64,000 bases of DNA, from IMG/VR virus record IMGVR_UViG_3300022744_000020, positions 1-64,000 of that record, one strand, 5' to 3'. This document shows, in pieces, positions 1 to 30,978 of the stretch (the first letter of the stretch is position 1; every line of letters starts with the position of its first letter). The notes under the pieces were generated by a model. The model had not been told where the DNA came from. It did not search any database and saw only the letters and a list, made by a program, of their open reading frames with translations. A program made the translations under genes and the position numbers.

Positions 1-1299
1 TTGCGGCGCAATACCGATGATGCAATAAAAATGAACTCTTCACAAACCGCAGCGTCTCAGATTCACGTCTTCTATCAGCCTGCTCCGTCGTTATATCACA
101 TTCAAAGATCAAGCCCTAATGCGAAGGCCCACCGCCCTGCTGCCGTTGAGAATTCGGCGGCCTACACACGGATGGAGATTCTGTATCAGAACTACACGGG
201 TCAGCCTGTAACCGTTGCTGACCGTCGCGGCTTGACAACTAGGATTCCAACTCAGTTATGCGCGGGTCGTAGTGACTTTGTAATCATCCTTCGCTACACG
301 TTTTACGGCGACTGCAGCAAATCACTCATGGAGCAAATCGCTCATGTAGACCACGACTCAAGCCTGGAGATGAAGCAGATCAAGAAAGAACTCCAGGATT
401 TACCTAAAGGACAACAGAAAGCAATCTCGGTAGATATCACGTACGTGATTGAAGTCAAGGATTTGTCAGCTCCGTGTTATCATAGCACGACCGACCTCTT
501 GCTGACCAGAGCGTCTTGCGGTAAGAGTCCAGCACACCCCTACTGCTCTCGGTACGTGGACGCTTCTTCTCTAACAAACTCTAACCAGATCATGGCGACC
601 CCAGATCAGGCAGTGTTTGTTCGCTACCACAGCCGATCAAAGAAAGTCCGCTACATCAACCTCTTCGGAAGAACACTACAGCTTATCCCTAATCCTCAGG
701 TCGAAGCACCTGAGGATAGAAGGGAGAAAAACTCAGACGGTGGGATGTACATTTACTACCCAAAGAGAAACGCAGTAGGTGATCCAATCCCTGACGACAA
801 TGTGGCGTGGATGTACTACACTCTCGAAGAAGCTCGGGAGAAATTCCACATCTACGAGAGCATCCACGATGCAATGCAAGGCGGTACTGAGATTGAATTA
901 GCTGCTCGAAAAGAAGCCGAAAAACAAAAAGCTCACGATGATCTCGTGAGAGAACTTAAACGAGACACTGAAATACTTAAGACCCAGAATGCAGTTCAGG
1001 ATCAAATCTATCGAGACAGAGATGCTGAGCGGGAAGAACACCTCGCTAGAATTAGACGTCTTGAGTCCGAGAGAGAGGATCAGAGAAAGAAACAACTGGA
1101 CGAAGAAAAGAGGCAAGCCGAACTAGAAGCAATGCGATTAAAGCAACAGCGCGAACATTACGAACACCTAGCCAAAATGGAAGAGATGAGAAGAAAAGAC
1201 AAGTCTGACTCAATTAAGTTCTTCGCCACCTTGGTGGTAGCTGGTATCACACTGGTTACGGCCATCGTCAAACTGGTGCCTTCTGGGGGAAAGCCATAA
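1..1299 (+). CDS. Hypothetical protein with long charged coiled coil and C-terminal transmembrane anchor (start uncertain, may be truncated by the window edge)
   Basis: Open frame from position 1. E/K/R/Q-rich heptad region in the last third, then hydrophobic FFATLVVAGITLVTAIVKLV at the C-terminus. Lies immediately upstream of the gp123-like gene. Confidence 0.75.
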   Translation: MRRNTDDAIKMNSSQTAASQIHVFYQPAPSLYHIQRSSPNAKAHRPAAVENSAAYTRMEILYQNYTGQPVTVADRRGLTTRIPTQLCAGRSDFVIILRYTFYGDCSKSLMEQIAHVDHDSSLEMKQIKKELQDLPKGQQKAISVDITYVIEVKDLSAPCYHSTTDLLLTRASCGKSPAHPYCSRYVDASSLTNSNQIMATPDQAVFVRYHSRSKKVRYINLFGRTLQLIPNPQVEAPEDRREKNSDGGMYIYYPKRNAVGDPIPDDNVAWMYYTLEEAREKFHIYESIHDAMQGGTEIELAARKEAEKQKAHDDLVRELKRDTEILKTQNAVQDQIYRDRDAEREEHLARIRRLESEREDQRKKQLDEEKRQAELEAMRLKQQREHYEHLAKMEEMRRKDKSDSIKFFATLVVAGITLVTAIVKLVPSGGKP

Positions 1300-1369: not shown

Positions 1370-2983
1370 ATGATTGATCCATTCCTTGTTGCGAAGATTG
1401 AGGCCAACACGCCAAAGATTAACCCTGACATCGGTCGAGGGTTGGCGGTAGTTCAGATGAAAGGGGCATTTGCTCATCTGGACCGGATAATCCGAATAGC
1501 GGCACGAGATTTCCCGCCGGGATTCACCTACGACAAACTGGAGATCGTCTCTCCGGAGCGTGAGCTCAACGCAGTCGTGGTGAAAAAGCCAGGTCGTCGG
1601 ATACACGACGTGGCTCGTAAGAACATGCGAGTGCTTTCTGTGCAGATGAGTCTGCATGGTCAGCCCCTGCCTGAGCGATTCATTCAAGTACCCTTCGTCG
1701 AAGACGGCGGGCTTACCAACATCAACGGCAGTTACTACACCGTCTCTCCGGTTCTTTCTGATCCGATCGTCTCGATCTCGGAAGACCTGGTGTTTGTGAG
1801 GCTCCTCAAGGCCAAACTCACCTTCGAGAGAATGCCGTTTGCATACTTCATCAACGACCCAGTAAAAATCAGAAAGACTGAATCGGTACAGATCGTCCAC
1901 TCCAGCATCTACAACAAGAAAACTCCAACCACAGGAGAAACCATCAAGGCGCAATGTACCTTGATGCACTACTTGCTCTGTAAGTTTGGCTACACCCAGA
2001 CGTTCAAGCAGTATGCGGGCGTTGTCCCGATCATCGGCGGATCAGAAATTAACGACACCAACTATCCAATAGAAGAGTGGGTGATCGCTGAAGGAGCAGG
2101 AAACAAAAACCGAAGACCCGGAATGCCAGTCCCGGTGGTGCGCGTAGCAATTCGAAGAGCTGAGTACACCCCGGCTCTTCGATACTTCATAGGTGGTCTG
2201 TTTTACATCGTTGAGAAGTTTGCGACGAAGATTGATGTTGCCTACGTCGACGACACCAACATGTGGAAGAGATTCCTGGGGGAGATCATCTGGTCACCAG
2301 AAGTAGCAGCAGGCCGACTGATCAGTGATGTGAGGGAACACCTTGCATCACTAGACGAGTACGTGGACCCGGACACGCAGATCAAACTGCATGAGTCTGG
2401 ATTCATTTGCTCAAACCTGTACGATCTATTTGCCATCATCATCGTGGAGTTCGATACCCGAACCCTTGATTCTGATGACGCTGCAGCATCTTGCTATGGG
2501 AAAGTGTTGGACGTGATCAATTACGTCCTCTACGACATCACGGCGGGGTTCTTCAAATTGTACTTCAAGCTCAAAGCAAAAGGTGCAGAGATCACGTACC
2601 GGGAAGCAGAGGCTGCGATTGCAAGCACCGTTAGGACTGGTGCCGCTTTCCGACTTCACCGAACCCACGGAGAAGTTGCCACACACAGTTGCTCGAGTGC
2701 TGTGATGCCGTTCAAAGTCACGGCCATGATGGTCCCTCAGCAAAAGTCCACGAAGTCACCCTCCAGGGGAGGAGACCGTGGAGCAGATCAGGATCCGTCT
2801 TCACTTCGGCACGCCACCCTGCCAGTAGTTGGTCAGTTAGCTGGCCCCAAATCTGGCCCCAATGGACGACACCGAGTATCGCCCTTTCTTCGACTTACCC
2901 CTACTGGGAAGATCATTGAGAATCCTGAGATTGCGGATCTTCTCAAACGAACCCAAGACACGCTGACGAAAAAGATGACATGA
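1370..2983 (+). CDS. Non-virion RNA polymerase beta-like subunit, N-terminal part (phiKZ gp123 homologue)
   Basis: 537 aa. N-terminus MIDPFL..KIEANTPKINP..GLAV and INGSYYTVSPVLSD...KLTF match gp123 as recalled (MPDPFLIEKIRENTP..., INGAKYIGSPVLTD...KLTF). Confidence 0.88.
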   Translation: MIDPFLVAKIEANTPKINPDIGRGLAVVQMKGAFAHLDRIIRIAARDFPPGFTYDKLEIVSPERELNAVVVKKPGRRIHDVARKNMRVLSVQMSLHGQPLPERFIQVPFVEDGGLTNINGSYYTVSPVLSDPIVSISEDLVFVRLLKAKLTFERMPFAYFINDPVKIRKTESVQIVHSSIYNKKTPTTGETIKAQCTLMHYLLCKFGYTQTFKQYAGVVPIIGGSEINDTNYPIEEWVIAEGAGNKNRRPGMPVPVVRVAIRRAEYTPALRYFIGGLFYIVEKFATKIDVAYVDDTNMWKRFLGEIIWSPEVAAGRLISDVREHLASLDEYVDPDTQIKLHESGFICSNLYDLFAIIIVEFDTRTLDSDDAAASCYGKVLDVINYVLYDITAGFFKLYFKLKAKGAEITYREAEAAIASTVRTGAAFRLHRTHGEVATHSCSSAVMPFKVTAMMVPQQKSTKSPSRGGDRGADQDPSSLRHATLPVVGQLAGPKSGPNGRHRVSPFLRLTPTGKIIENPEIADLLKRTQDTLTKKMT

Positions 2984-5900
2984 CACCCATTTCCATCCCG
3001 AGTCCTCCCGTCGTTTTTGAGCCGACTGAATTATCGGCCGTATTCGGAGAAGGAGAGTATCGGTTTGGTAGCAAGGAAGAAGTGCAGCAACACAAGCCCT
3101 TCTTCCAGCAGGATAAAAATCGTCCGGTTAACCGCGATTTCCTGCAGCGTCTGGAAAACCGATACGACGTCGTCGGAGACAACGGCATGCGCACACCCGG
3201 TCTGCGACAATACGAACTCAACCCAATCAGTCAAGCTACAGGACACTACTTCCCCAGAATAAATCACATCAACACCAAAGACTTCTTGGACCCCGACTCC
3301 ATTGTTCCGGGATCCTATCTGGACATGTCTTTCCAGTGCAATGCGGTGCTGGAAGATGAAAACATCAACATTCGAGATCACTTACCGCAGTTCATACAAA
3401 CGGACCTGACCCAGCACCCGCTGATTCAGCTTGCTGCCCACTACTGCAGCCAATACACACAACAGGTAGATTACGACAAAATCGTTCTGGCGGACAACAT
3501 TGCAAAGCGATGGACCGCTAATTTTGCCACGGCAGTGACGCGCTCGGCAGTATCCCGGTGGATGCAAATCCCTGAGAACTTCTTGCTGTTCAACCAAGTG
3601 GCCTACTGGTGTAGTATTTATTACTGCACGAAAAACGGAAAAGGAGATTTCCTCGCCCATTGCGACGATGCTGCGCTGTGGACCTACAAGCTGTTCGAAA
3701 AGATATTCCTTCAACAAAGCCCCCAAGTCTGCGAAATAATTCTTCGTAAAGATTTGGTGTACTACATCCGCAACTTTCAGGATTCAGTTAACGAACTAGG
3801 AACAATTCTCACCCACCTCAGCAAAATAATCCCGGAGGCTAACCAAGCTTTAACAAACCCAATTGAAATAAAGGTCAGACCGCATCTTTGCCCGAAAGAC
3901 TACGATCCGCATATTTACAACATGCTGGAGATGGTCAAAGAAGGCACCGTTGAGAAATACATCTCCAGCGATGATTGGACCCCAAAGAACTCTCAAGCAC
4001 AACTCGTTACCGTCTTACAGCAAGCCTTGGATCAGCGATACCGCTATCCAATTCCTCTGGACTATTTGTACTGGAAAAGAAAACTAGACGAACAAGAAAG
4101 CAGCGCAGTACAGGAATCTTTCGTTTGCAAAAACATCGAACCTAAAGGAGATGTAGACCCAGCTCTTCGATTCATTCAAACCGAACAGAACAATCTCATC
4201 CCAGGATATCCGGAACCCACTACCGCGCCTGGAAACTTCTTTGGTCATTGGCTACCTTACAAAGGAACTTACTTTTACGATCGTCTGGCTAACGCCTACA
4301 ACCCGGCTAATTGCTATAGCATCGTCTCGAGCAACGGAAGGATTTTTGACAGACACGGAAATGAATTAGAGTTCCATCGGATCGCACCAGAGCACTATCT
4401 GGCACGACTCCTGAATGGACAAAATAAGTTTTTGCCCATCATCATCGGGGGAGGACACCCCAACGATGGACAGACCTGCGAAAAACCACATCTTCCAAAC
4501 TACATTCCTGAGGAAAACAGCATGCATGGACTCACGCCATTCCACAACGGCAGCAACGGCTCTGGTTTTGGGCTCGTTCAACGCCCCACCCATCAACCTC
4601 TGATCCAAGGCAATGGCTTTGGAGTAGGTTCGCAACAAATTCAACAGCAGCAACAACCTGCCGCTGCGATGATTTACGGTTACGACGTTTCCGGAAATCG
4701 TCAACCCATCTCGATTGCTGAGGCTGCCCACGTGTGGCGTACCTCGAATGGCCAAGCGCAGTTCTATCACGAGAACAACGAGCCTGTGTCTTTTGGATAC
4801 AATGCTCAAGGTCAGGTCGTGATGGCCCAACCAGTCGCACGGGTGCAAAGCACCGTCGGCTTCGGACGCCCGAATGCCGCTTCGACTGTGGGGTTTGGTA
4901 CGGCGGCGAGTTCCTCGTTTGGCACCGCCACTGCGTTCAATCGCAGCACAGTTTCGGCCGCGATTCCCAACCACACTTTCCAAGTCGCGCAGGAAGGTGA
5001 CGGTCTTGGCAGTCGCAGGCTGGATCCTTCGAACCCCGCAAGCTTTGCACTCACCATGGGTCGCCGAGCTGCTGCAGCACGTGCCGCTCAAACACAGGAA
5101 GCCACTCCGGCGGCAGCCCCTCAAGCAACTCAGCAACACCGACCGTTGCCCAATACGGCCTCACTCGTGAGCAGTCTGGTAGCACGTCACCCGACGACGG
5201 CACTGCCGGCCGCGACTCCTGCTCCAGCGCCCCAGCCGGCACCCAAGCCGGCTGCCCAGCCTGCAAAAGAGATCGACGTGATGGCCGATCTGGATCTGGA
5301 TCGTCAAGCTTTCTACGTCAATGAAAGCGCACTCTACCATCCGGTTCTGGACAAGTCGCGTTTTCGTCTGGGCATCAAGGTCAAAGCAGGCGTGGCCAAG
5401 AAGATCATGGCCTATCCGTTGGATGCAGATGAGCAGGCTGACTGGCAGATCGAACACCCGTGGCATCGTCGTGGGGCTGGTGACGCGATCGCAGATTCTC
5501 TTCGCAAGTCTGGCATCGTCGGACTTCCCGACAAGGTTGTGGATGGTGAAGGGGTTTCGGAAGATACACCAGACTACTCCGGTCCTGGGGAAGAAGAAGC
5601 GGAGAACCAGCGCCTGGCTGAGGAGAAGGATGTTTCGCGAGACACTTCGGGCGCTGTGCTGTCCCAGACCACCATCGGCTCTTCCATCGACGACGTGTTT
5701 GCTCGGCTTGATCACAAGCTCAGTCGTTCCGGAACTAAGGAAGCCGGATTCATCGGAGCCGTCGGCGAAGTGTTCGACAAAATCAAGCCGGTCCTGCTTC
5801 GCTCGCGTACGGAATCGGACCTCCTGGGCACGTGGGCTCTGGCCAAGGACCTGAATCAGCTCGCTCAGCATCTCATGGTCAGCCGCCTGCGAATGAAGGA

Positions 5901-6537
5901 CAAAGCACACTTCAGTCACACCCTGATCCAACTCATCACGACGGCCAATCAGGCCATGACCAAGGCAGTCAACGATCTGCTCAAGCGAATCAACAGCCCG
6001 ATCACCATCTCCGATTTCATGCTCGACATGCTGGACCTCACGGCCGCTGTTCGTCGAGATCATGGACAAGAGATTCTCGACCTGATGGAAGGACTTAGCC
6101 AAGAAACCATCGAGCGTGGTCTCGATCACATCAACACCCGTACGGATGAGCGTGCTGCAGCATACATCTCCAGCGTCGTGCCTGACCGCGCACATGACGA
6201 TCCTGAAAACCCCACGCAGGTGATCCTGCTGCGCGAACGCCAAGTGTGCGTTTCGGTGAACGCAACCTCTGAAGACCTGGGCATTCAAGACTGGGCCGAA
6301 AAGAGCGGCGGTGGCCACGCCGTTGGACGCACTCTGGACGTTAACGCCAAACTCGCCAGCGCTGGCCTGCGTGCCCTGGCTCGCGTTTACGGCAACTACG
6401 TCCATGACGTGGACGGCCGTCCCGGCATGCTGCTCAAGACCATCGATCAGCAATACTACAAACTCATTTCTGACAAGGATGACGAAGAAGGAAATCCGCG
6501 CTGGTATTCGATGTGGTGCGTGACGGGTCAGGTCTGA
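2980..6537 (+). CDS. Large hypothetical protein with central low-complexity Q/A/S/G region bearing FG motifs; possible internal start at 4522
   Basis: 1185-aa ORF with an ATGA overlap on the nvRNAP gene. GAGGA lies 7 nt before an in-frame ATG at 4522. Confidence 0.75.
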   Translation: MTPISIPSPPVVFEPTELSAVFGEGEYRFGSKEEVQQHKPFFQQDKNRPVNRDFLQRLENRYDVVGDNGMRTPGLRQYELNPISQATGHYFPRINHINTKDFLDPDSIVPGSYLDMSFQCNAVLEDENINIRDHLPQFIQTDLTQHPLIQLAAHYCSQYTQQVDYDKIVLADNIAKRWTANFATAVTRSAVSRWMQIPENFLLFNQVAYWCSIYYCTKNGKGDFLAHCDDAALWTYKLFEKIFLQQSPQVCEIILRKDLVYYIRNFQDSVNELGTILTHLSKIIPEANQALTNPIEIKVRPHLCPKDYDPHIYNMLEMVKEGTVEKYISSDDWTPKNSQAQLVTVLQQALDQRYRYPIPLDYLYWKRKLDEQESSAVQESFVCKNIEPKGDVDPALRFIQTEQNNLIPGYPEPTTAPGNFFGHWLPYKGTYFYDRLANAYNPANCYSIVSSNGRIFDRHGNELEFHRIAPEHYLARLLNGQNKFLPIIIGGGHPNDGQTCEKPHLPNYIPEENSMHGLTPFHNGSNGSGFGLVQRPTHQPLIQGNGFGVGSQQIQQQQQPAAAMIYGYDVSGNRQPISIAEAAHVWRTSNGQAQFYHENNEPVSFGYNAQGQVVMAQPVARVQSTVGFGRPNAASTVGFGTAASSSFGTATAFNRSTVSAAIPNHTFQVAQEGDGLGSRRLDPSNPASFALTMGRRAAAARAAQTQEATPAAAPQATQQHRPLPNTASLVSSLVARHPTTALPAATPAPAPQPAPKPAAQPAKEIDVMADLDLDRQAFYVNESALYHPVLDKSRFRLGIKVKAGVAKKIMAYPLDADEQADWQIEHPWHRRGAGDAIADSLRKSGIVGLPDKVVDGEGVSEDTPDYSGPGEEEAENQRLAEEKDVSRDTSGAVLSQTTIGSSIDDVFARLDHKLSRSGTKEAGFIGAVGEVFDKIKPVLLRSRTESDLLGTWALAKDLNQLAQHLMVSRLRMKDKAHFSHTLIQLITTANQAMTKAVNDLLKRINSPITISDFMLDMLDLTAAVRRDHGQEILDLMEGLSQETIERGLDHINTRTDERAAAYISSVVPDRAHDDPENPTQVILLRERQVCVSVNATSEDLGIQDWAEKSGGGHAVGRTLDVNAKLASAGLRALARVYGNYVHDVDGRPGMLLKTIDQQYYKLISDKDDEEGNPRWYSMWCVTGQV

Positions 6538-6582: not shown

Positions 6583-6630
6583 AGGAAGGATCCCCGATGG
6601 GGATCCTTCCTGCTTCTTCTTTTTTTTTTT
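6583..6630. terminator. Bidirectional intrinsic terminator
   Basis: 13-bp stem AGGAAGGATCCCC/GGGGATCCTTCCT (6583-6611) followed by a T run to 6630, between convergent genes. Confidence 0.8.
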
Positions 6631-9373
6631 ATTTGTCAGGAACGGGCTCGGGCTCCAGTTCCGGCTCCCCATCGGGATTATCAGGATTCTCACCACCCGC
6701 AGCAGACTCGGGATTCTCACCCCCAGCATCGAGCGGGTCGGTACCGGTGAGGTCATCGCCACCACCCGCGTCCATCCCAAAATCTTCGCCACCACCGTCA
6801 CCGGTGTCGTCGGTAGTGGATGAGAAATCAGTTCCAGAATCAGAGGTGCCTCCATCAGCCCCCAGCTTTTCCAGATCCTTGTCAGCGGCGTTGGCCATGT
6901 CCTTGGTCTTCGAAATGATCTTCACACAAGAACGAATCACCGCCTCCAGATGTTCAGAGGTTTCATCGATCACGTTGATCATTGGTTGGCCATCATCATC
7001 CTTACTCGTCAGATCCGACAGTTCAGGAAGGATGCCCTTCTTGGCCATGTACCGGCGCATGTAGTACGCTTTGACCATTGCTCGAATGGTACCGACTTGG
7101 CCGGAGATGGTTCCGGCGTTCTCGCTCGTCGCCAACTGATCACTGATGTGATGATCAATACCAGCGTCCAGAAGATCCGAGTAATTGCGCAGTAGCTGCA
7201 ACTGATTTTCCAGAGTGACCGACGGCGGCCGGGGAAGTGCCACCTCCAAATTCCACAGGAATTCATTCAGTGACCGATTGACCAGCAGGATTTTTTTCGA
7301 CTCTTCCGGGAGTTGGGAATATTGCGGGAAGCTGGATTCGTCGATCTGAAGCTTGACCTGATCGATTTTCTCCAGGACCAAATCCTTTAAAGAATCCACG
7401 AACGACTGATCGTAGGCCATGACTTTGCGCATTCGATCAGACAACTGAGGACAAAACACATCTTGGTAACCCATGATGCGCTTGCCGTACATGATCGAGC
7501 GCGCCGCTACCGAAGTAGCAACCTCACCGGAAAAACCCTCCTTGATCTGCTCCGGACTCATCCCGAAGTTGTAAGCCGACATCTTCTCCAGATTCTCCGA
7601 CAACGAGGAGTCTGGTTTCGTGTAAGAAGAGTTTGTCTGCTCAAAGGTGTACTTGATGTCCGGAATGGCCGTGTTGCCACTGATCTCCCACTCATAACCC
7701 AGTCGCTGGATCATGTCCACAGCATCTTGAGGATGAGCGATGGATCTTGGCAGTGTGAAGTTTCGAGTACGGAAAATCTCATCGATGGATTCTTCGATGG
7801 TTTGCTCCGGATTCGGATCGTGCTCAGGCACGTTCATGCTGACTCGCGTCCGAGGCGTAGAGTTCTTAATCCCGGTCAGGAGATCATTGAACAGAACGAC
7901 CGAACGCATCATGTTCAGGGTGGAGATGTTGTCCACCAAGCTTTTGCCATTGCCGTCATCGTCGTATCGGAAGGCGATGTAGCTCAGATACTCCGCGGGA
8001 ATATAAAGAACTTGTGTGAACTTGTTCTCGTTGGCCCGCGCCATCATCACCTGATAAAAGTGCGAATTGCTCGAGATCTCGACACTTCCACCGTGCACGC
8101 CGTTCTTGATTCGATTGATCCAATCCTTTTCAATCAGATCTCCCCAAATCCGAGTGATGGTCTCCACCTGCATCCGATTACCCGGATTATACGTGCCGCC
8201 CATCCCTAAGTTTGCATGGATGCGAGCCATCACGTTGGTTTGATTTCCACCGCTCTGGTACGTTCCCAGCGTGTTTTGATTCAGGATGTCGTTGTTCTCG
8301 ATGCGGATCGGATAACCTTCAGCATCCAACAGAACAAAAGCACCCACGCGCTTTTGATAGTCCCCAGGACTATGAACCACCGTGATCGATTCAGAGGGTA
8401 GATCAAGCGTCATCGGCTTACCGATGAAGGATCTGCGCATCTCCGACTGCTTCTTGATGCTGACAACTGGCTCATTACCACGAGCCGTCCCAGTACGAAG
8501 ATGTTTTTCCACCAGTTCATCAGCCAGATCTGAGAAAGCCTCCAAACCCTGAGAGCGCATTTGTCTCATGGTGGCTTTTCGAACAGATTGCTGACGGATC
8601 TTATCGTGCACCTTCGGGATTTTCAACACCGAGATGTTGTCCGTCATGACGATGCAGTCCATGTACCAGGACTTACTGGAAGCAGTCTCCTCCCCCAGAT
8701 AAAGTCTTTTCTCCACACGCTCAGGATCGCTCACCGCGTGAAAAGCTTCGATCGACAAACCCCTGACTTTTTCCTTCTTCGAATCCGTCGGACTGCCAAG
8801 AACCCCAACGTTGCGCATGAGTCCTTTATCGTCCACAATAAAAGACAGCGATTCGTTCGAGATATACCGATCTCCATTGATCAAATCATCCACTGCGTTC
8901 TCAGGGATAATCGCCAATGCATCGCAACCTTTGTCGATCAGAGCCTTGCGAAGGATCTCCGGCAACATCGGCTTTATCTTGTAGTCGGTTTCGAAATACT
9001 CTGTGATTCGGTTAATCAAAGAAGCCGTCAGCTCGGAAGAGAAGACAGTTTTAGGTCCCGAATAAGTCAGCTCCGTGGTACCCATGTCCACTGGAGACAA
9101 AATAGAAGCGATTGTAGTGGCCGCCGCCATTTCCAAGTCGGGCAGCAACTCCATCGCCATCTTGGTGTTGGCGTTGCGGCTGGCACGACGTTCGGGTGCG
9201 GCTTTCAGCAAATTCGCATCGAACACCCCATTCTTGCGATTCCCGTGCTGGTCCCTCGTCGGGGGGCGTTTCGTCGACGCCGTAGCCTTAGAGACCAAAC
9301 TAGCCGTCAGGGGATCGGCCTTAACCAGGTCAAACACCTGGAAAGTTACCTTGTTTGCTGGTTTTAATTGCAT
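6629..9373 (-). CDS. Portal protein (phiKZ gp129 homologue)
   Basis: 914 aa with the MELLPDLEMA...ASILSP motif and an acidic Gly/Asp C-terminal tail. Divergent from a gp128-like gene. Confidence 0.75.
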   Translation of the reverse strand: MQLKPANKVTFQVFDLVKADPLTASLVSKATASTKRPPTRDQHGNRKNGVFDANLLKAAPERRASRNANTKMAMELLPDLEMAAATTIASILSPVDMGTTELTYSGPKTVFSSELTASLINRITEYFETDYKIKPMLPEILRKALIDKGCDALAIIPENAVDDLINGDRYISNESLSFIVDDKGLMRNVGVLGSPTDSKKEKVRGLSIEAFHAVSDPERVEKRLYLGEETASSKSWYMDCIVMTDNISVLKIPKVHDKIRQQSVRKATMRQMRSQGLEAFSDLADELVEKHLRTGTARGNEPVVSIKKQSEMRRSFIGKPMTLDLPSESITVVHSPGDYQKRVGAFVLLDAEGYPIRIENNDILNQNTLGTYQSGGNQTNVMARIHANLGMGGTYNPGNRMQVETITRIWGDLIEKDWINRIKNGVHGGSVEISSNSHFYQVMMARANENKFTQVLYIPAEYLSYIAFRYDDDGNGKSLVDNISTLNMMRSVVLFNDLLTGIKNSTPRTRVSMNVPEHDPNPEQTIEESIDEIFRTRNFTLPRSIAHPQDAVDMIQRLGYEWEISGNTAIPDIKYTFEQTNSSYTKPDSSLSENLEKMSAYNFGMSPEQIKEGFSGEVATSVAARSIMYGKRIMGYQDVFCPQLSDRMRKVMAYDQSFVDSLKDLVLEKIDQVKLQIDESSFPQYSQLPEESKKILLVNRSLNEFLWNLEVALPRPPSVTLENQLQLLRNYSDLLDAGIDHHISDQLATSENAGTISGQVGTIRAMVKAYYMRRYMAKKGILPELSDLTSKDDDGQPMINVIDETSEHLEAVIRSCVKIISKTKDMANAADKDLEKLGADGGTSDSGTDFSSTTDDTGDGGGEDFGMDAGGGDDLTGTDPLDAGGENPESAAGGENPDNPDGEPELEPEPVPDK

Positions 9374-9416
9374 TTGTTTCTCACTTGCCGCAGATGTGGA
9401 AGATGGAGCCTTTTAA

Positions 9417-11681
9417 ATGAATACTCGCTATCAGATCTATGTTCGAGACACGTTTCACCTGGTAGGCACCATGGGGATCTGTTTTGATCACTGCGCACTT
9501 GCAGTGAATAAGGGCATACAAATTCAAGACCCCAGCTACAGTATCCCGGACTCGTCCTTAGACGACCGGGCTAGCTGGAAGTATTATCAGAATATGGCCG
9601 GCCTACGTCATGAGACAGACCCGCTGATCACAATACCCTCACTCCAGACCGGGGAGTCAATTGAATTCTCAAAGAAATCTTTTCGAGATGATCCTGTAAC
9701 TAAGGCAGCCTACCGGCGAGGGACCATTCCGTATTACGAGCTCATCGGAGCTCACCCCGAAATGATTGAGTACATTCATGGGGTGATTTATGCGCCGGAT
9801 CCAAAATGGAGTTTCTTTACGACCCCCGATGGTGAGATCGTCGACACCACCGACTATTTAAGCTATCCGCTGGAGATCGTCAAAAAACCCAACGGGACGA
9901 TTCTGTATTTTGACTCAAACTACGTCGAAGAAAATGAATACCACTTGATTTTCGAGATGCAGAATTGGATTTACGATTATCTCCATCGTTGGGCTGTCTG
10001 GCCGTACGCCGTAGTTGATGATTTGTACGTGGCCGACGTTGTTGCGAAGCTGGCAATTTTGCTGGTTCCATACATCATCAATGCTCGACTGAGAAGATGC
10101 AAGACAAACGAAGTTCACAGCTTCCACATCAAACAGTACCTTGGATCGAAGGGTATCCCTGAAATCTATTTGGACGTGTTGGATAAGAAGCAGTCTCTTT
10201 TCCTGTATCGGAACCTGGATTACATTCGCACGCACGCAGGAAAGCGCGATGTGATGCTTTGGCTGATTGAAAACATCATGACCGCCAGAGGCTTACCGGT
10301 TTCTCAGTACGTCATCAAGCATCTGCTGACTGATTTCCGTTACGATGAAACACTGAAGGATCACGTCAGCCTGACGCCGACGCCATTCCTTCAGAAGAAA
10401 ACAATCGGAACCCCCGACGAAGTCTTTGTGAATGTGGGCTACACCCATCAGGCGATTCTGGAGAAGATGAACCAGAGAGCTCCTGGTAATCCCGGATTGC
10501 ACGTCAATGAGTTCGAAAAGCTCGACCGCGCTCTCTATGAATCGACAGCCAATACCCTGCAGACGAAGGTCTTGGAGTCTCGGTCCGACGACGTTCAAAC
10601 AACCACGCCGTATGGACTGGAAGAAGTGGCGATCAATGAGTGGTTGAGACTTTCAATTTCTGGGGAGTACAGCGTCAAGACCACGATTGCGATACCCAAC
10701 ATGAAAAATGAGGTATCACTCACGTCTAGAGAAGCAGCGTTTCTTTTTGGTTACTGCCTGATTAAACTCCACCAAGGATTCCAGTTAGATCCAGACGGAA
10801 AGATATACCCGTGGAGTAACTACTTTGACGTGAATGAGGATGGGACTCTGTGCGACCCGGCATTCCTTGTTTCCAGAGTGCTCAAGAAAGAAATCCCCAC
10901 TCTGGGATATTTGAAGACGCAAGTGCAAGAGAAGGTGCTGAGTGATTCGGAACTTGCCTTGAGCATTTCCGGGTACCCGATATTCACTTCGGCCAGAACA
11001 ACCCAAGAACTCATTGATTGGTCGAAGAAGGTGCACAACTTTGCCTGCAAGCAAAGACTGCTCGGGGCTCAGTTCTACACCCCGACAAGATACGGGATGT
11101 TTACTCTGGCGTGTACCAAATCGTGGAGGGATGAAATGATCTCCCTCCCAGGGTTTCATAGCTGGAGGGAAGACAGCGGCGTCAACCTAGAGAACTGCTC
11201 GGTAGAAACCCTTACAAACTTAGCTGCGTCTTTGGTGACTATTTTCGGGGGTTACAGCAACGATGAAGCTAACGAGATGAAGAAAGTGCAGAAGGCGATG
11301 ATCGCCATTATGCAGCGACTTCTGAGTTACTCGGTTCAGTTCATCTCAGACGAGGGGACGACGGACAACTTGGTCTTAGATCAAAGACCGCATCGTTACG
11401 GCACAGGCAAGTTGGACGCACAGCTCAGGTGTGGGGTTCCACTGAGTTTGGATGTGGTGGAGATCGCAACCACCGCAACCATTGATGCAAAGGCTGTCTG
11501 GAATAACTACACCCAGCATAAACCCGACTGCGTAACTCGCGCAACGATCTCGGTGGATTATGGGACGCTTCACCGTAGGGTTAGTGGTAAGGTAATTCAA
11601 ACCAATCCATCTAAATCGCCAAAGACAATTGTTATCCGATCGAGAATACCGCAAATCGAATTCACTGGGAATAATATTTAA
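9417..11681 (+). CDS. Virion structural protein (phiKZ gp128-like, probable baseplate component)
   Basis: 754 aa. Motifs WKYYQNMAG.RHETD, EVHSFHIKQYL and QSLFLYRNLDYI..HAGK are typical of this family; synteny agrees. Confidence 0.72.
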   Translation: MNTRYQIYVRDTFHLVGTMGICFDHCALAVNKGIQIQDPSYSIPDSSLDDRASWKYYQNMAGLRHETDPLITIPSLQTGESIEFSKKSFRDDPVTKAAYRRGTIPYYELIGAHPEMIEYIHGVIYAPDPKWSFFTTPDGEIVDTTDYLSYPLEIVKKPNGTILYFDSNYVEENEYHLIFEMQNWIYDYLHRWAVWPYAVVDDLYVADVVAKLAILLVPYIINARLRRCKTNEVHSFHIKQYLGSKGIPEIYLDVLDKKQSLFLYRNLDYIRTHAGKRDVMLWLIENIMTARGLPVSQYVIKHLLTDFRYDETLKDHVSLTPTPFLQKKTIGTPDEVFVNVGYTHQAILEKMNQRAPGNPGLHVNEFEKLDRALYESTANTLQTKVLESRSDDVQTTTPYGLEEVAINEWLRLSISGEYSVKTTIAIPNMKNEVSLTSREAAFLFGYCLIKLHQGFQLDPDGKIYPWSNYFDVNEDGTLCDPAFLVSRVLKKEIPTLGYLKTQVQEKVLSDSELALSISGYPIFTSARTTQELIDWSKKVHNFACKQRLLGAQFYTPTRYGMFTLACTKSWRDEMISLPGFHSWREDSGVNLENCSVETLTNLAASLVTIFGGYSNDEANEMKKVQKAMIAIMQRLLSYSVQFISDEGTTDNLVLDQRPHRYGTGKLDAQLRCGVPLSLDVVEIATTATIDAKAVWNNYTQHKPDCVTRATISVDYGTLHRRVSGKVIQTNPSKSPKTIVIRSRIPQIEFTGNNI

Positions 11682-11743
11682 TCTCAGGTGGGCTTTATCT
11701 TTTGATTAGGCCCACCCCTTCATTTCTTTTTGTTGAGACCGAC

Positions 11744-12595
11744 ATGGAAAATACCGTCCCTACCGACCTGCTGAGTGTCCTCATTGCGATGACGCTGTAC
11801 CGTCGGCCTTTCGTCGCACCTGCCTTCACCACGATCAATGAAAAGCTCGGCATCCAGTCGACCGCAGCACTTCCTCCGAACACGTACCCGGAGATCGGAT
11901 ATCTGATCATCGGTAACGGTGGACATCGCGCCGTTACCGGTACGAACGGCCTCAGCAAGAATTCTAATTATCAGCACGAGACTGAGAATTACGCACTGTT
12001 CAATCAGATCCCCTACGTTTTGCGTGATCCGGCGGATGATCTGACCCCGGAAGAGCGCCAACGCTTCCGACTGAGAAAGACCGTCGAAATCGATACCAAA
12101 TCCTACGTGGCCTACTATGGTCGCCGACTGGATCTGGCAAACTCCAACATCGTTCTCGAAAAACGAACCGTCAGCCCAGATGGGAAGGTGATCGACAAGA
12201 CCCCACTGGTGCCGCAGGCGAAGAATCTCTCCCCGACGCCGACAGTGCTCAGCAACACGGGTGTGAATGAGCTTGCCAACGTGATGCACTATTGCGGGAT
12301 TCGGATCACCATCTCTTTCACGGCGGCAGACGTTCAAGAGTTGATCAACGTCTCGAACATTCTCTACAAAGATCCTGGGTATGCCATCATCTCAGAAATG
12401 GGTCTGTGCTCAGGGATCGAGAAGGTTGTAACGGCTGCAACCCCCAGCGGCAACATCAACTACAACGAAGTCATCGGTTGCCAAATCATGACCCACATCA
12501 GCGGATCGACGCTGGACATGCAATCTTTCACTTCGGGCGGTTTCAACTTCGAACTCTACGGTGGTTCGGACAATCCGCAGTATCAGCTCGTCTGA
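11744..12595 (+). CDS. Virion structural protein (phiKZ gp127-like)
   Basis: YPEIGYLIIGNGGH, LFNQIPYVLR...DLTPEERQRFRLR and AIISEMGLCSG motifs. ATG 11744 preferred over TTG 11702. Confidence 0.72.
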   Translation: MENTVPTDLLSVLIAMTLYRRPFVAPAFTTINEKLGIQSTAALPPNTYPEIGYLIIGNGGHRAVTGTNGLSKNSNYQHETENYALFNQIPYVLRDPADDLTPEERQRFRLRKTVEIDTKSYVAYYGRRLDLANSNIVLEKRTVSPDGKVIDKTPLVPQAKNLSPTPTVLSNTGVNELANVMHYCGIRITISFTAADVQELINVSNILYKDPGYAIISEMGLCSGIEKVVTAATPSGNINYNEVIGCQIMTHISGSTLDMQSFTSGGFNFELYGGSDNPQYQLV

Positions 12596-15067: not shown

Positions 15068-16510
15068 ATGTCCTACTCTTTGGATGTATTGGGCAAGACG
15101 CTCCAGAATAAAGTCATCGGGGAGAAACACACCCTCACCCCTAAGACGAATCCGGACGATACGCTTTGGATCATTTTAGAGAACTCCCCCTTCCACGAGT
15201 GGGAGTTCTCTATGAAGTACACGCCGAAGACCGGACCATCCCGAATTCTTCAGTATGGTCTTGACTTCGACTTCTGCTTCCAGTTCCTGAAGGCAAGTCA
15301 GTCCTGCAATTTGCCCATCTACGCAGGTGTGAAGTTTGTGGATGTCACCCTCGACGGTGAAGTCCTGGTGAACTATCAAGCATTCGGGTCCGACTACTCG
15401 CTCACCTCCGCGCAGAGAACTCAGGCTTACAGCACGATCAAAACCGATCCGAGTTACATGACCTGGGAGTCTGCGGTTAAGGCACTTGGGTTGACCATGG
15501 AATGGTCACTTGTGGTGGATCATCCGTGGTCAAGCGTGAATGTCGATGTTGTTCGTCGCGCTAAGGAAGAGCTGGAAAAAGCGGGTCTGGTGGTTCATCT
15601 GAGACCTGAGTTTCTCCCGACCCCGGAGCAAGCAAAATTCATTCCTTCCGCCGATGAATTGGGTTTGGGGTTGGTTGAAAATTACCCCATGGCCACAGTC
15701 GCTGAATCGGTTTTGGGTAATTCGGAAAAGCTCTACCTGAATCCCAAAGGGGCAAACGCATTGGTGGTGGACCGAGTGCGCACGACCTTGGCTGAAATGG
15801 GTTATCAACTACCTGTCAAGTTTGCGGCCGGAATCACCTTCAACGACACGAAAAAGACAGTCGTCTACGACGATGTGGTTTACGCTGCACGTCAATCACA
15901 AGTCCCTTTCGTTACCAACGGTTTGTTCGATGCGAAGAAGTTTGTCGCGATCAATTCCAATTCTCCTGCTCACTGGATCAACTTTCCGACCTTCAAAATC
16001 GGAGAATCTCCAGCGCGGAATGTGTTGAATCAGGTGGTTTTGGATATCCCTCAAGACTTCACTCACCGAGTACGCGCCCGAGCGATTCTCAACGACACCG
16101 AAGAGCTGGTGTATGGCATCGACTTCTTCATCGACAATCGCAAGCTCAGCGTCGAATATCCTCTGAGGTCCGGCGATCGGATTCGTTTGTCCGTCAAATC
16201 GACGGCATCAAAAACGGCTGATGATCGAAATTATTACAAAGTGTTCAAAGTCGCCAGTGGGGTCAAAGACTTCCAACTCAGCGACTTTTATTACCTCACG
16301 GTGGATGACCTTCGGGTCACTGTCAATGACTGGTACGTCCTGGATCCCGATCAGGACTACACCATCAACACTTCCGGGGTGATGAGCATTGTCTACCCGC
16401 TCGAGCTCGGAGACATCATTGAAGTGGAGTCTCTGGACAACATCCCCGAAATGGGTAAACAGCAAATGAGATCAATTTTGTTTGCCGTTGGCAGCACGAT
16501 TGTGGCCTAA
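15068..16510 (+). CDS. Virion structural protein, probable fibre/baseplate attachment (phiKZ gp130/gp139-family N-terminus)
   Basis: D..G....N.V.GE.H N-terminal motif, LGLGLVENYPMAT fibre motif, and two C-terminal repeats (YPLRSGDRI / YPLELGDII). Confidence 0.62.
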   Translation: MSYSLDVLGKTLQNKVIGEKHTLTPKTNPDDTLWIILENSPFHEWEFSMKYTPKTGPSRILQYGLDFDFCFQFLKASQSCNLPIYAGVKFVDVTLDGEVLVNYQAFGSDYSLTSAQRTQAYSTIKTDPSYMTWESAVKALGLTMEWSLVVDHPWSSVNVDVVRRAKEELEKAGLVVHLRPEFLPTPEQAKFIPSADELGLGLVENYPMATVAESVLGNSEKLYLNPKGANALVVDRVRTTLAEMGYQLPVKFAAGITFNDTKKTVVYDDVVYAARQSQVPFVTNGLFDAKKFVAINSNSPAHWINFPTFKIGESPARNVLNQVVLDIPQDFTHRVRARAILNDTEELVYGIDFFIDNRKLSVEYPLRSGDRIRLSVKSTASKTADDRNYYKVFKVASGVKDFQLSDFYYLTVDDLRVTVNDWYVLDPDQDYTINTSGVMSIVYPLELGDIIEVESLDNIPEMGKQQMRSILFAVGSTIVA

Positions 16511-27828: not shown

Positions 27829-27890
27829 TTGGGACTCCAAAAATGATTATTAATGCTCGGCTGTCGCCTCAAACCATCTGAGATAAAAGC

Positions 27891-30957: not shown

Positions 30958-30978
30958 CTTATGTTGAATGGAGCCAAA

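What the first reader, a model, noticed from the sequence alone, without database searches (positions are those of the whole stretch)
4522..5280. FG-repeat low-complexity domain in a probable nucleus-forming phage
Seen: six FG dipeptides within about 120 aa (SGFG, NGFG, VSFG, VGFG, VGFG, SSFG; 4561-4923). The spacers are low in charge and rich in Q/S/G/N/A/T, with a QQIQQQQQP tract, and an Ala/Pro-rich linker follows. The gene is translationally coupled to the nvRNAP subunit. Established: FG repeats in such spacers form the phase-separating permeability barrier of nucleoporins, and phiKZ-like phages build a selective protein nucleus. Inference (speculative): a condensate-forming or FG-Nup-like component involved in phage nucleus transport or transcription.
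Basis: partly seen in the sequence, partly recalled or inferred. Interest (0 to 1): 0.62.

Follow-up and report, generated by a model that had tools for sequence, protein, structure and literature searches.

The report
FG-rich linker of a divergent JADA
The FG-rich stretch is real, but it is the flexible middle part of a very divergent copy of JADA, an essential early protein that nucleus-forming jumbo phages encode right after an RNA-polymerase subunit; low-complexity linkers of other flavours occur across that family, and nothing found here ties this one to nucleoporin-like transport.

Summary
Six FG dipeptides lie in 119 residues; 6 of the 7 Phe there are followed by Gly (shuffles give a mean of 0.94, p<5e-5). 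This is the densest FG cluster in the 270-kb phage genome.

The stretch is not a gene. It is residues 515-767 of an 1185-aa ORF (window 2980-6537, +) that overlaps the nvRNAP beta-subunit gene (phiKZ gp123 homologue) by ATGA.

Synteny, profile-profile comparison (98.1%, E 6.5e-14) and fold comparison (PDB 9RP3, Z 14.1 over 109 residues) identify the C-terminal domain as JADA (phiKZ gp124). JADA is an essential, abundant early protein. It forms foci at the early infection vesicle, activates the Avs5 defence, and its knock-down perturbs phage transcription.

The FG region sits where published JADA has its disordered inter-domain linker. In 14 other JADA-position proteins that linker is also low-complexity, but in other flavours: GW, Q/Y, YG/RG, RD/RG, G/P/Q. 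FG is specific to this clade.

The 510-aa N-terminal domain has no detectable relative outside the four-member clade.

A nucleoporin-like role is not supported. A role as a sticker-bearing tether or condensation element is plausible but untested.

The parts
1370..2983 (+). Non-virion RNA polymerase split beta subunit (phiKZ gp123 homologue), upstream gene
   Evidence: phrog_2943 'polymerase', E 8.2e-122. BLASTP to phiKZ gp123: 28% identity over the full length, E 2e-69. tblastn finds 208 jumbo-phage records, all under 60% identity (best 34.8%).
2980..6537 (+). 1185-aa ORF (P0001): divergent JADA (phiKZ gp124) orthologue that contains the FG region; ATGA overlap with the upstream gene
   Evidence: ORF and translation. 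The same position as gp124 / RP12 ORF091 / FLC9 gp89, directly downstream of the gp123 homologue. Full-length homologues P0005 (97%), P0006 (76%) and P0008 (28%) sit in the same synteny. dN/dS against P0006 is about 0.1-0.15 where dS is not saturated.
2980..4509 (+). N-terminal domain, residues 1-510: clade-specific, no detectable relative
   Evidence: No Pfam or PHROG hit. No tblastn hit in phages at E<=1. hhalign against 14 JADA N-domains gives probability 0.1%. No usable hit in the protein atlas. 86% identical to P0006 and 29% to P0008.
4510..4665 (+). FG block 1, residues 511-562: SGFG, NGFG and the QQIQQQQQP tract
   Evidence: Sequence entropy falls to 3.3 bits and hydrophobic residues to 22-24%.
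4666..4854 (+). Embedded, better conserved segment, residues 563-625 (holds VSFG at 603-606); possibly a small folded element or binding motif
   Evidence: 73% identical to P0006, against 58% for the FG blocks. Its pLDDT is 41-45 against 20-24 in the flanks, with strand-strand-helix-strand-strand, in an otherwise failed model. This is weak evidence.
4855..5046 (+). FG block 2, residues 626-689: VGFG, VGFG, SSFG plus further Phe at 653, 667 and 689
   Evidence: All three FG and all six Phe are kept in P0006; F628, F639 and F689 also align to Phe in P0008.
5047..5280 (+). Ala/Pro-rich linker, residues 690-767; prone to insertions and deletions
   Evidence: 30% Ala and 17% Pro. A 12-nt x 3 repeat lies at 5230-5265. 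P0005 lacks two residues here. One metagenome contig has a 6-nt deletion at 5215 and another replaces 121 nt at 5103-5225.
5281..6534 (+). C-terminal domain, residues 768-1185: homologous to the JADA C-terminal (dimer-forming, Avs5-activating) domain
   Evidence: hhalign: probability 98.1%, E 6.5e-14, residues 901-1167 against gp124 481-709. phrog_15010 (gp124 family), E 5.6e-4. BLASTP to RP12 ORF091, E 2e-4. Foldseek: 9rp3_A/B are the only significant PDB hits, E 1.2e-5, but TM 0.20. VIA-align: 9rp3_B Z 14.1, rmsd 3.0 A, 109 residues; next best Z 6.0.

Best explanation
The ORF at window 2980-6537 is a very divergent orthologue of JADA (phiKZ gp124). JADA is the essential, abundant early protein that Chimalliviridae encode directly downstream of the gp123-type nvRNAP beta subunit.

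The FG region is this protein's inter-domain linker. It takes the place of the segment that in published JADA is predicted disordered and, like the N-terminal domain, gave no density in cryo-EM. Here it is 2-3 times longer (about 257 residues against about 100-160). It joins a clade-specific 510-aa N-terminal domain to the conserved C-terminal domain, which in JADA forms a ring-like dimer.

Proposed mechanism (inferred). The linker is a low-charge, flexible 'sticker and spacer' tether. Its Phe residues, mostly as GFG/SFG, are the stickers and are kept under selection. If the protein dimerises like JADA, each particle carries two such linkers. Weak multivalent Phe-mediated contacts could then help it concentrate into the foci that JADA forms at the early infection vesicle or nascent nucleus, where early and nvRNAP-dependent transcription is set up.

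Shown here: the sequence feature, the gene structure, the synteny, the homology of the C-domain, and the low-complexity nature of the linker in every family member examined.
Taken from the literature on the family: disorder of the linker, dimerisation, foci, essentiality, effect on transcription.
Inferred only: that the Phe residues mediate self- or partner association.
For: Identity.
- The gene lies directly downstream of, and co-oriented with, the gp123 homologue (ATGA overlap). The neighbourhood matches phiKZ, RP12, FLC9 and six other jumbo phages.
- The JADA paper states that this position is invariant.
- C-domain homology: hhalign 98.1%, E 6.5e-14; phrog_15010 E 5.6e-4; Foldseek 9RP3 E 1.2e-5 with the next hit at 0.5; VIA-align Z 14.1 against 6.0 for the next.
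- Chimallin and PicA homologues are in the same genome.

Linker.
- Published JADA is N-domain 1-170, disordered linker, C-domain 270-721. The FG region lies between the last N-domain block and the first C-domain block (alignment A8).
- All 14 other JADA-position proteins surveyed carry a low-complexity linker of about 100-160 residues at that place.

Selection on Phe.
- 6 of 7 Phe are followed by Gly, against a proteome P(G|F) of 0.074.
- 10 of 11 Phe in residues 511-700 are kept in P0006, while spacer identity is 58%. My hand binomial gives p of about 0.02.
- No DNA tandem repeat explains the motifs.

Foci and transcription.
- JADA forms foci at EPI vesicles (PMC12931631).
- Knock-down of phiKZ124 alters phage transcript levels (PMC12571901).
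Against: - Disorder of this particular linker is not shown. The whole-protein model failed everywhere (mean pLDDT 31), so its low confidence in the FG blocks does not discriminate. My crude scales show only low complexity and few hydrophobic residues.
- The middle 63 residues may fold.
- Only four members of the long clade are known, so conservation statistics are thin. dS is saturated in the linker.
- FG is not the recurrent motif outside the clade, so a specific FG function is not a family property.
- The C-domain model was built with JADA-family rows in its alignment, has mean pLDDT 49, and its global TM to 9RP3 is only 0.20.
- The dimer could not be tested (one search gave no verdict).
- The function of JADA itself is still described as unknown (PMC13282480).
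Confidence: 0.55

Rival explanations
1. Passive entropic spacer. The region only sets the distance and freedom between the N- and C-domains. Its composition drifts freely and the FG dipeptides have no function of their own.
For: - Linker composition differs wildly between clades: FG, GW, Q/Y, YG/RG, RD/RG, G/P/Q.
- The linker is the least conserved part of the protein (58-67% against 80-86% identity to P0006).
- The Ala/Pro part carries insertions and deletions in natural populations.
- The JADA C-domain alone is enough to activate Avs5.
Against: - Phe is kept (10 of 11) far better than its surroundings, and is almost always followed by Gly.
- Most clades keep 5-12% aromatic residues in an otherwise polar linker, or else dense Arg/Gly. 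Both are typical of associative low-complexity domains rather than inert Gly/Ser/Pro spacers.
Confidence: 0.25
2. Short linear docking motifs. The GFG/SFG elements and the conserved segment at residues 563-625 bind hydrophobic pockets of a defined partner (nvRNAP subunits, chimallin, the import factor PicA, or a host protein) rather than acting by weak multivalent cohesion.
For: - The embedded segment is better conserved than the flanks (73% against 58%) and shows some predicted secondary structure.
- In the same genome the chimallin homologue has Phe/Gly-bearing tails. The gp70 homologue next to PicA ends in a tail with two GFG motifs joined by a Gly run, followed by NPFSF. That Phe/Gly-bearing tails are a docking currency in this phage is my speculation.
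Against: No partner is identified. The motifs are not positionally conserved in P0008 apart from F628, F639 and F689, and that alignment is uncertain. No complex test was possible with these shallow alignments.
Confidence: 0.1
3. One reading: an FG-nucleoporin-like domain that forms or lines a selective permeability barrier for transport through the phage nuclear shell.
For: - FG density (about 1 per 20 residues) and low-charge, Q/S/G/N-rich spacers resemble cohesive FG domains (comparison from general knowledge).
- The phage is nucleus-forming.
Against: - Six motifs in two short blocks, against tens in nucleoporins (general knowledge).
- No Pfam match above noise for the linker even at E<=10, so none to a nucleoporin FG-repeat model.
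- FG is not the recurrent motif in the wider JADA family.
- JADA is reported at early infection vesicles and linked to gene expression, not to shell pores.
- Import in these phages is attributed to PicA/Imp factors.
Confidence: 0.05

Closest known systems
JADA (Jumbophage AVAST5 Defense Activator; phiKZ gp124, Pa36 gp316; PDB 9RP3; Mol Cell 2026, PMC12931631)
   Same: The gene position is the same: directly downstream of, and co-oriented with, the gp123-type nvRNAP subunit. The C-terminal domain is homologous (hhalign 98.1%; 9RP3 is the only significant PDB match). The plan is the same: N-domain, low-complexity linker, C-domain. The genome background is Chimalliviridae-like.
   Different: The protein has 1185 residues against about 650-820. 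The N-domain is three times larger and has no detectable similarity to the JADA N-domain. The linker is about 257 residues against about 100-160, is FG/Q/S/G-rich, has an embedded conserved segment and is followed by an Ala/Pro-rich tract. Sequence identity in the C-domain is only about 16-21%. Dimerisation, foci, essentiality and Avs5 activation are untested for this protein.
FG-repeat domains of nucleoporins (cohesive, GLFG-type)
   Same: FG dipeptides at about 1 per 20 residues in low-charge, Q/S/G/N/T-rich spacers.
   Different: There are only six motifs in two blocks of about 50-65 residues. There is no profile match, no evidence of anchoring at a pore, and the motif is not the recurrent one among homologues outside a four-member clade.
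ChmC (phiPA3 gp61), the phage-nucleus-associated RNA-binding protein reported to form condensates (NAR 2024, PMC11077065)
   Same: A Chimalliviridae protein for which condensate formation has been reported; it is the precedent for such behaviour in these phages.
   Different: It is an unrelated protein at an unrelated locus. I found no sequence or positional relation, and it was identified only from the paper's title and abstract.
Aromatic-sticker and RGG low-complexity domains of eukaryotic RNA-binding proteins (FUS-like SYGG/RGG, Q/Y-rich prion-like, GW repeats)
   Same: Taken together, JADA linkers show these flavours. FLC9 clade: 5-8 GW/WG. LucasX: 35% Gly with YG and RG. Eowyn: 34% Q+N with 15 Tyr. 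Xoo-sp14, RSL2 and Centimanus: 23-34% Arg with 20-24% Asp+Glu.
   Different: This is a resemblance of composition only, judged from general knowledge. No homology is implied and no behaviour was tested.

Membership tests
JADA (phiKZ gp124 family, phrog_15010 and relatives) | [quoted passage not shown] | tested here: met
   ATGA overlap at 2980-2983 with the gp123 homologue. The same order is seen in phiKZ, RP12, FLC9, Xoo-sp14, pEa_SNUABM_54, Eowyn, LucasX, Centimanus, PA7 and RSL2.
JADA (phiKZ gp124 family, phrog_15010 and relatives) | C-terminal domain homologous to the JADA C-domain (fold of PDB 9RP3) | tested here: met
   hhalign 98.1%, E 6.5e-14 over 236 columns. phrog_15010, E 5.6e-4. 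Foldseek 9rp3, E 1.2e-5, the only significant hit. VIA-align Z 14.1, rmsd 3.0 A, 109 residues. Caveats: the model has mean pLDDT 49, global TM 0.20, and JADA-family rows were in its alignment.
JADA (phiKZ gp124 family, phrog_15010 and relatives) | N-terminal domain of about 170 residues homologous to the JADA N-domain | tested here: not met
   hhalign of residues 1-515 (4 sequences) against 14 JADA N-domains: probability 0.1%. No PHROG, Pfam or tblastn hit. The domain is either replaced or diverged beyond detection. The paper notes that few residues are conserved across JADA.
JADA (phiKZ gp124 family, phrog_15010 and relatives) | Long disordered or flexible linker between the two domains | tested here: inconclusive
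   A low-complexity, low-charge segment lies at the right place. Disorder itself could not be established because the whole-protein model failed.
JADA (phiKZ gp124 family, phrog_15010 and relatives) | C-domain forms a ring-like homodimer | tested here: inconclusive
   The complex prediction of two C-domain copies gave no verdict. It is not evidence either way.
JADA (phiKZ gp124 family, phrog_15010 and relatives) | Genome is of the nucleus-forming (Chimalliviridae-like) kind | tested here: met
   Chimallin homologue (E 2.3e-8; phrog_4795, 8.6e-55) and PicA/gp69 homologue (E 3.6e-19; phrog_3141, 4.7e-57). A phiKZ-type major capsid protein is in the relative's locus.
JADA (phiKZ gp124 family, phrog_15010 and relatives) | Early, abundant, essential; foci at EPI vesicles; activates Avs5 | not testable with these tools
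   Experimental properties of Pa36/phiKZ JADA. The host of this phage is unknown.
FG-nucleoporin-like FG-repeat domain | Many FG motifs (tens) spread over a long disordered domain | tested here: not met
   Six FG in 119 residues, split into blocks of 2, 1 and 3. The criterion is from general knowledge.
FG-nucleoporin-like FG-repeat domain | Match to a nucleoporin FG-repeat profile | tested here: not met
   hmmscan of residues 511-770, and of the linkers of four relatives, against Pfam at E<=10 gave no nucleoporin family.
FG-nucleoporin-like FG-repeat domain | FG motifs conserved or enriched in homologues | tested here: inconclusive
   Kept in the clade: 4 of 6 in P0006 and 3 FG in P0008. Among 14 wider family members FG counts are 0-3, and other motifs dominate.
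FG-nucleoporin-like FG-repeat domain | Anchored at a transport channel of the compartment boundary | not testable with these tools
   Localisation would have to be measured. Published JADA localises to EPI vesicles.

The most novel reading that the evidence does not exclude
JADA linkers are not mere spacers. They are a rapidly diversifying, family-wide set of eukaryote-like associative low-complexity domains: FG here, GW in the FLC9 clade, Q/Y in Eowyn, YG/RG in LucasX, RD/RG in RSL2, Xoo-sp14 and Centimanus. On this reading they drive the condensation of JADA into the foci seen at the early infection vesicle. That would create a transcription or assembly hub for the co-encoded nvRNAP before and during nucleus formation, a phage counterpart of transcriptional condensates. 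The window's protein, with its doubled linker and extra N-domain, would be an extreme form.
Probability: 0.2. Interest if true: 0.75.

Novelty: new variant of a known kind. Interest (0 to 1): 0.42.

Why it matters
JADA is essential, early and abundant. It is the trigger of the Avs5 anti-jumbo-phage defence, yet a 2026 review still lists its function as unknown.

The published work describes the linker only as 'disordered or flexible'. A text search of that paper for 'condensate', 'phase separ' and 'low-complexity' found nothing.

Three points follow from this window and the small survey made here:
- The family reaches into very divergent freshwater and wastewater phages.
- The N-domain can be exchanged or enlarged while position and C-domain stay.
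- The linker is always a low-complexity domain of a kind that, in eukaryotes, mediates weak multivalent association or RNA binding.

That gives a concrete, testable idea for how JADA forms foci and why it sits beside an RNA-polymerase gene. It does not give evidence for a nucleoporin-like barrier.

Tried and rejected
- tblastn of the whole protein, its N-part and its C-part against 50,697 phage records: no match, even at E<=1 for the parts.
- IMG/VR scans with the protein and with the clade alignment: no relatives. A scan with classical JADA sequences returned only four FLC9-clade loci.
- Word-indexed searches found only P0005, P0006 and P0008 itself. The exhaustive representative search added only P0008; its other hit, P0009, is an unrelated repeat protein matching 60 residues at E 4.9e-4, which I discarded.
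- Sequence search of the PDB with P0001: only Ala/Pro-rich noise.
- Whole-protein AlphaFold2 with 4 sequences: mean pLDDT 31. It is unusable and I do not cite it as evidence of disorder.
- Protein atlas with the N-domain: no usable hit.
- hhalign of the N-domain against JADA N-domains: nothing.
- Complex prediction of two C-domain copies: no verdict. It counts neither for nor against dimerisation.
- BLASTP of the ORF upstream of the polymerase gene (window 1-1299) against phiKZ gp122: no similarity (E 0.53). I therefore call it only the positional equivalent.
- The charge-hydropathy plot is uninformative for this low-charge Ala/Gly-rich sequence.
- One wastewater run labelled RNA-Seq holds near-identical contigs. 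The label is a guess and contigs cannot show transcription, so I make no claim of expression.
- Internal start at 4522: a GAGGA lies 7 nt upstream, but this phage's real starts show no consistent Shine-Dalgarno motif, and 2 of 19 internal ATGs have one by chance. I did not pursue it.
- Long antisense ORFs at 4366-5139 and 5161-6453 (-): taken as spurious. The + frame is conserved in three homologues with dN/dS of about 0.1.
Full report
**What is at the coordinates**

The window is the first 64 kb of a 270,383-bp virus record that is estimated 98% complete. The interval 4522-5280 lies inside one long + strand ORF, 2980-6537, of 1185 residues (P0001). Its ATG overlaps the stop of the preceding gene by ATGA.

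The flagged stretch is residues 515-767, and 4522 is an internal Met codon.

- Six of the seven Phe in residues 525-650 are followed by Gly. Shuffling gives a mean of 0.94 FG and never six in 20,000 trials.
- Across about 265 ORFs of the whole genome this is the densest FG cluster (the next has four). Phe is followed by Gly only 7.4% of the time in the proteome.
- Charge is low (7% DEKR). The Gln tract (residues 552-560) and the Ala/Pro-rich stretch (residues 690-765; 30% Ala, 17% Pro) are as described.
- No DNA tandem repeat underlies the FG motifs. The only one is 12 nt x 3 at 5230-5265, in the Ala/Pro part.

The stretch is a segment of a large protein, not a gene. The FG tract is interrupted by a better conserved 63-residue piece (residues 563-625).

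**The phage**

The upstream gene (1370-2983) is the gp123-type split beta subunit of the non-virion RNA polymerase:
- phrog_2943, E 8.2e-122;
- 28% identity to phiKZ gp123 over the full length, E 2e-69;
- 208 jumbo-phage records hit, none above 35% identity.

The genome also encodes a chimallin homologue and a PicA/Imp1 (gp69) homologue. It is therefore a distant nucleus-forming (Chimalliviridae-like) phage. Near-identical and related contigs occur in freshwater and wastewater metagenomes from 19 studies.

**What the protein is**

P0001 has no Pfam family and no tblastn match among 50,697 phage records. Only three full-length relatives exist in the large protein collections: P0005 (97% identity), P0006 (76%) and P0008 (28%, 1219 aa). 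P0006 and P0008 sit in the same gene order.

The neighbourhood is major capsid protein, one or more genes, gp123 homologue, this gene, then homologues of phiKZ gp129, gp128 and gp127. The same order appears in RP12, FLC9, phiKZ and six further jumbo phages. In all of them the gene after the polymerase subunit encodes a 687-816-residue protein.

In phiKZ that protein is gp124. It belongs to the JADA family, which was named after its orthologue gp316 of phage Pa36; the solved chain of PDB 9RP3 ('Gp316/JADA') matches phiKZ gp124 over its full 721 residues at 1666 bits.

The paper on JADA (Mol Cell 2026, PMC12931631) reports the following:
- It is essential, early and abundant.
- It forms foci at early infection (EPI) vesicles.
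- It activates Avs5 through its C-terminal domain.

Separately, antisense knock-down of phiKZ124 strongly affects phage transcript levels (PMC12571901).

**Homology, beyond position**

- The C-terminal part of P0001 hits the gp124 PHROG (phrog_15010, E 5.6e-4) and RP12 ORF091 (BLASTP, E 2e-4) at the same conserved helices.
- A profile of the four long proteins against a profile of 14 JADA-position proteins gives hhalign probability 98.1%, E 6.5e-14. It aligns residues 901-1167 with gp124 residues 481-709.
- I made an AlphaFold2 model of residues 768-1185 with a 19-row alignment that includes FLC9-clade JADA proteins. It is poor overall (mean pLDDT 49) but reaches 66-79 for residues 947-1057.
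- Foldseek finds 9RP3 chains as the only significant hits among 350,542 PDB chains (E 1.2e-5; the next is 0.5), although the global TM is only 0.20.
- Re-alignment gives Z 14.1, rmsd 3.0 A over 109 residues at 21% identity. The next entry has Z 6.0.

The model is not independent of the family alignment, so I treat it as consistent with the profile result rather than as separate proof.

The N-terminal 510 residues show no relation to the JADA N-domain (hhalign 0.1%) or to anything else.

I therefore file the protein as a divergent JADA orthologue with a replaced or unrecognisably diverged, enlarged N-domain.

**What the FG region is within that protein**

It occupies the place of the JADA linker, between the last conserved N-domain block (ending about residue 510) and the first C-domain block (from about residue 775; alignment).

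I measured the segment aligned to gp124 residues 166-270 in 14 JADA-position proteins. Every one has a low-complexity linker of about 97-160 residues, but the flavour changes by clade:

| Clade or phage | Linker composition |
|---|---|
| FLC9 clade | 24-34% Gly, with 5-8 GW/WG |
| P0023 | Gly-rich, with 3 FG and 2 GW |
| Eowyn | 34% Gln+Asn, with 15 Tyr |
| LucasX | 35% Gly, with YG and RG repeats |
| phiKZ | Gly/Pro/Gln/Met-rich, with Tyr |
| Xoo-sp14, RSL2, Centimanus | 23-34% Arg with 20-24% Asp+Glu, and many RG |

The long clade has a linker of 257-291 residues, with 10-12 Phe and 3-6 FG.

So a low-complexity linker is a family property, and FG is this clade's version of it.

Within the clade, Phe is kept better than its surroundings. 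Ten of 11 Phe are conserved in P0006, while the FG blocks are 58% identical. P0006 retains 4 of the 6 FG. P0008 has three FG. F628, F639 and F689 align to Phe there, though an alignment in such sequence is uncertain.

The Ala/Pro part is the most plastic:
- P0005 has a two-residue deletion there.
- One metagenome contig has a 6-nt deletion at 5215.
- Another contig replaces a 121-nt stretch.

**How it most likely works**

Shown: the architecture and its conservation.
Taken from the literature on the family: linker disorder, C-domain dimer, foci at EPI vesicles, essentiality, an effect on transcription.
Inferred: the linker is a flexible sticker-and-spacer tether whose Phe residues give weak, multivalent contacts. 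If the protein dimerises like JADA, it carries two linkers, and such contacts could help it concentrate at the infection vesicle or nascent nucleus alongside the co-expressed polymerase subunit.

I rate the identity (a JADA orthologue, with the FG region as its linker) at about 0.85. I rate the associative role of the Phe residues at about 0.3-0.35. The combined statement gets 0.55.

Rivals:
- a passive spacer (0.25);
- specific docking motifs, including the conserved 563-625 segment (0.1);

The nucleoporin-like reading fails on the number of motifs, on the absence of any Pfam match above noise even at E<=10, on conservation outside the clade, and on the reported localisation of JADA.

**Limits**

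- I could not run a disorder predictor. The whole-protein model failed everywhere (mean pLDDT 31) and cannot be used as evidence of disorder. Crude scales show only low complexity and few hydrophobic residues.
- The dimer test returned no verdict.
- dS between P0001 and P0006 is saturated in the linker, so dN/dS there is unreliable.
- The clade has four members.

**Novelty**

The family is known (2025-2026), and the linker has been called disordered. A text search of that paper found none of 'condensate', 'phase separ' or 'low-complexity'.

What is new here:
- a very divergent, enlarged member from uncultured freshwater and wastewater phages;
- an orphan N-domain;
- an FG-type linker twice the usual length;
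- the survey result that JADA linkers as a set resemble the associative low-complexity domains of eukaryotic RNA-binding proteins.

I class it as a new variant of a known kind, of moderate interest.

**Housekeeping**

- Read laying was given 3,558 letters.
- Only genetic code 11 was used.

Noticed in passing
G000:C1:113201-114904 (+) = L023:12702-14402, outside the window: The gene next to the PicA/Imp1 homologue encodes a 567-aa homologue of phiKZ gp70 (BLASTP E 9e-14; phrog_3520). It has a Pro/Gln-rich linker. Its C-terminal tail holds two GFG motifs joined by a Gly run, followed by NPFSF. This is a second Phe/Gly low-complexity element in a nucleus-associated protein of the same phage; phiKZ gp70 is listed among nuclear proteins in bioRxiv 10.1101/2024.03.27.586873.
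   Followed up: partly
G000:C1:101585-103576 (+) = L023:1134-3074, outside the window: The chimallin homologue (phrog_4795, E 8.6e-55) has low-complexity N- and C-terminal tails that carry Phe next to Gly (for example PGF, TGF, GGF). Chimallin tails are known to mediate lattice contacts (my own knowledge). Whether they relate to the JADA linker is unknown.
   Followed up: no
window 5103-5265: The Ala/Pro-rich part of the linker varies in length in nature. There is a 12-nt x 3 repeat at 5230-5265, and P0005 has a 2-residue deletion. One freshwater contig has a 6-nt deletion at 5215, and another replaces 121 nt with 106 other letters.
   Followed up: partly
A product starting there would have 671 residues, close to the size of classical JADA. 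This phage's genuine starts show no consistent Shine-Dalgarno motif, and 2 of 19 internal ATGs have one, so this is probably chance.
   Followed up: partly
window 44075-53881 (-): A 3268-aa ORF that holds an extreme Ala/Gly low-complexity tract (92% G/Q/N/S/P/T/A over 60 residues, near residue 1927). It was not identified.
   Followed up: no
window 16537-23070 (+): A 2177-aa ORF with a short tail-fibre-like match (phrog_23820). It lies in a stretch of raised G+C (0.57-0.61 against about 0.50 elsewhere), which may mean a recently acquired or fast-evolving host-recognition gene.
   Followed up: no
window 15068-16510 (+), 24173-25756 (-), 25777-27840 (-): Three proteins share an N-terminal module of phrog_2163 (virion structural protein) with different C-terminal parts. 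This looks like a paralogous family of structural proteins.
   Followed up: no
window 6629-12595: The block homologous to phiKZ gp129, gp128 and gp127 (phrog_3004, phrog_3222, phrog_3315) is inverted relative to phiKZ, and no gp125 equivalent lies between it and the JADA gene. RP12 and the P0008 phage share the window's arrangement.
   Followed up: partly
window 4366-5139 (-) and 5161-6453 (-): Long antisense ORFs (257 and 430 aa) lie opposite the linker and the C-domain, in the G+C-richer part of the gene. They are probably spurious, because the + frame is conserved in homologues.
   Followed up: partly
window 30961-32541 (+): A homologue of the phiKZ-type RNase H-like ribonuclease (phrog_3265, E 2e-90). 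A 2026 preprint calls a Chimalliviridae RNase H protein 'Rhc' and links it to replication and transcription (seen only in the search listing).
   Followed up: no
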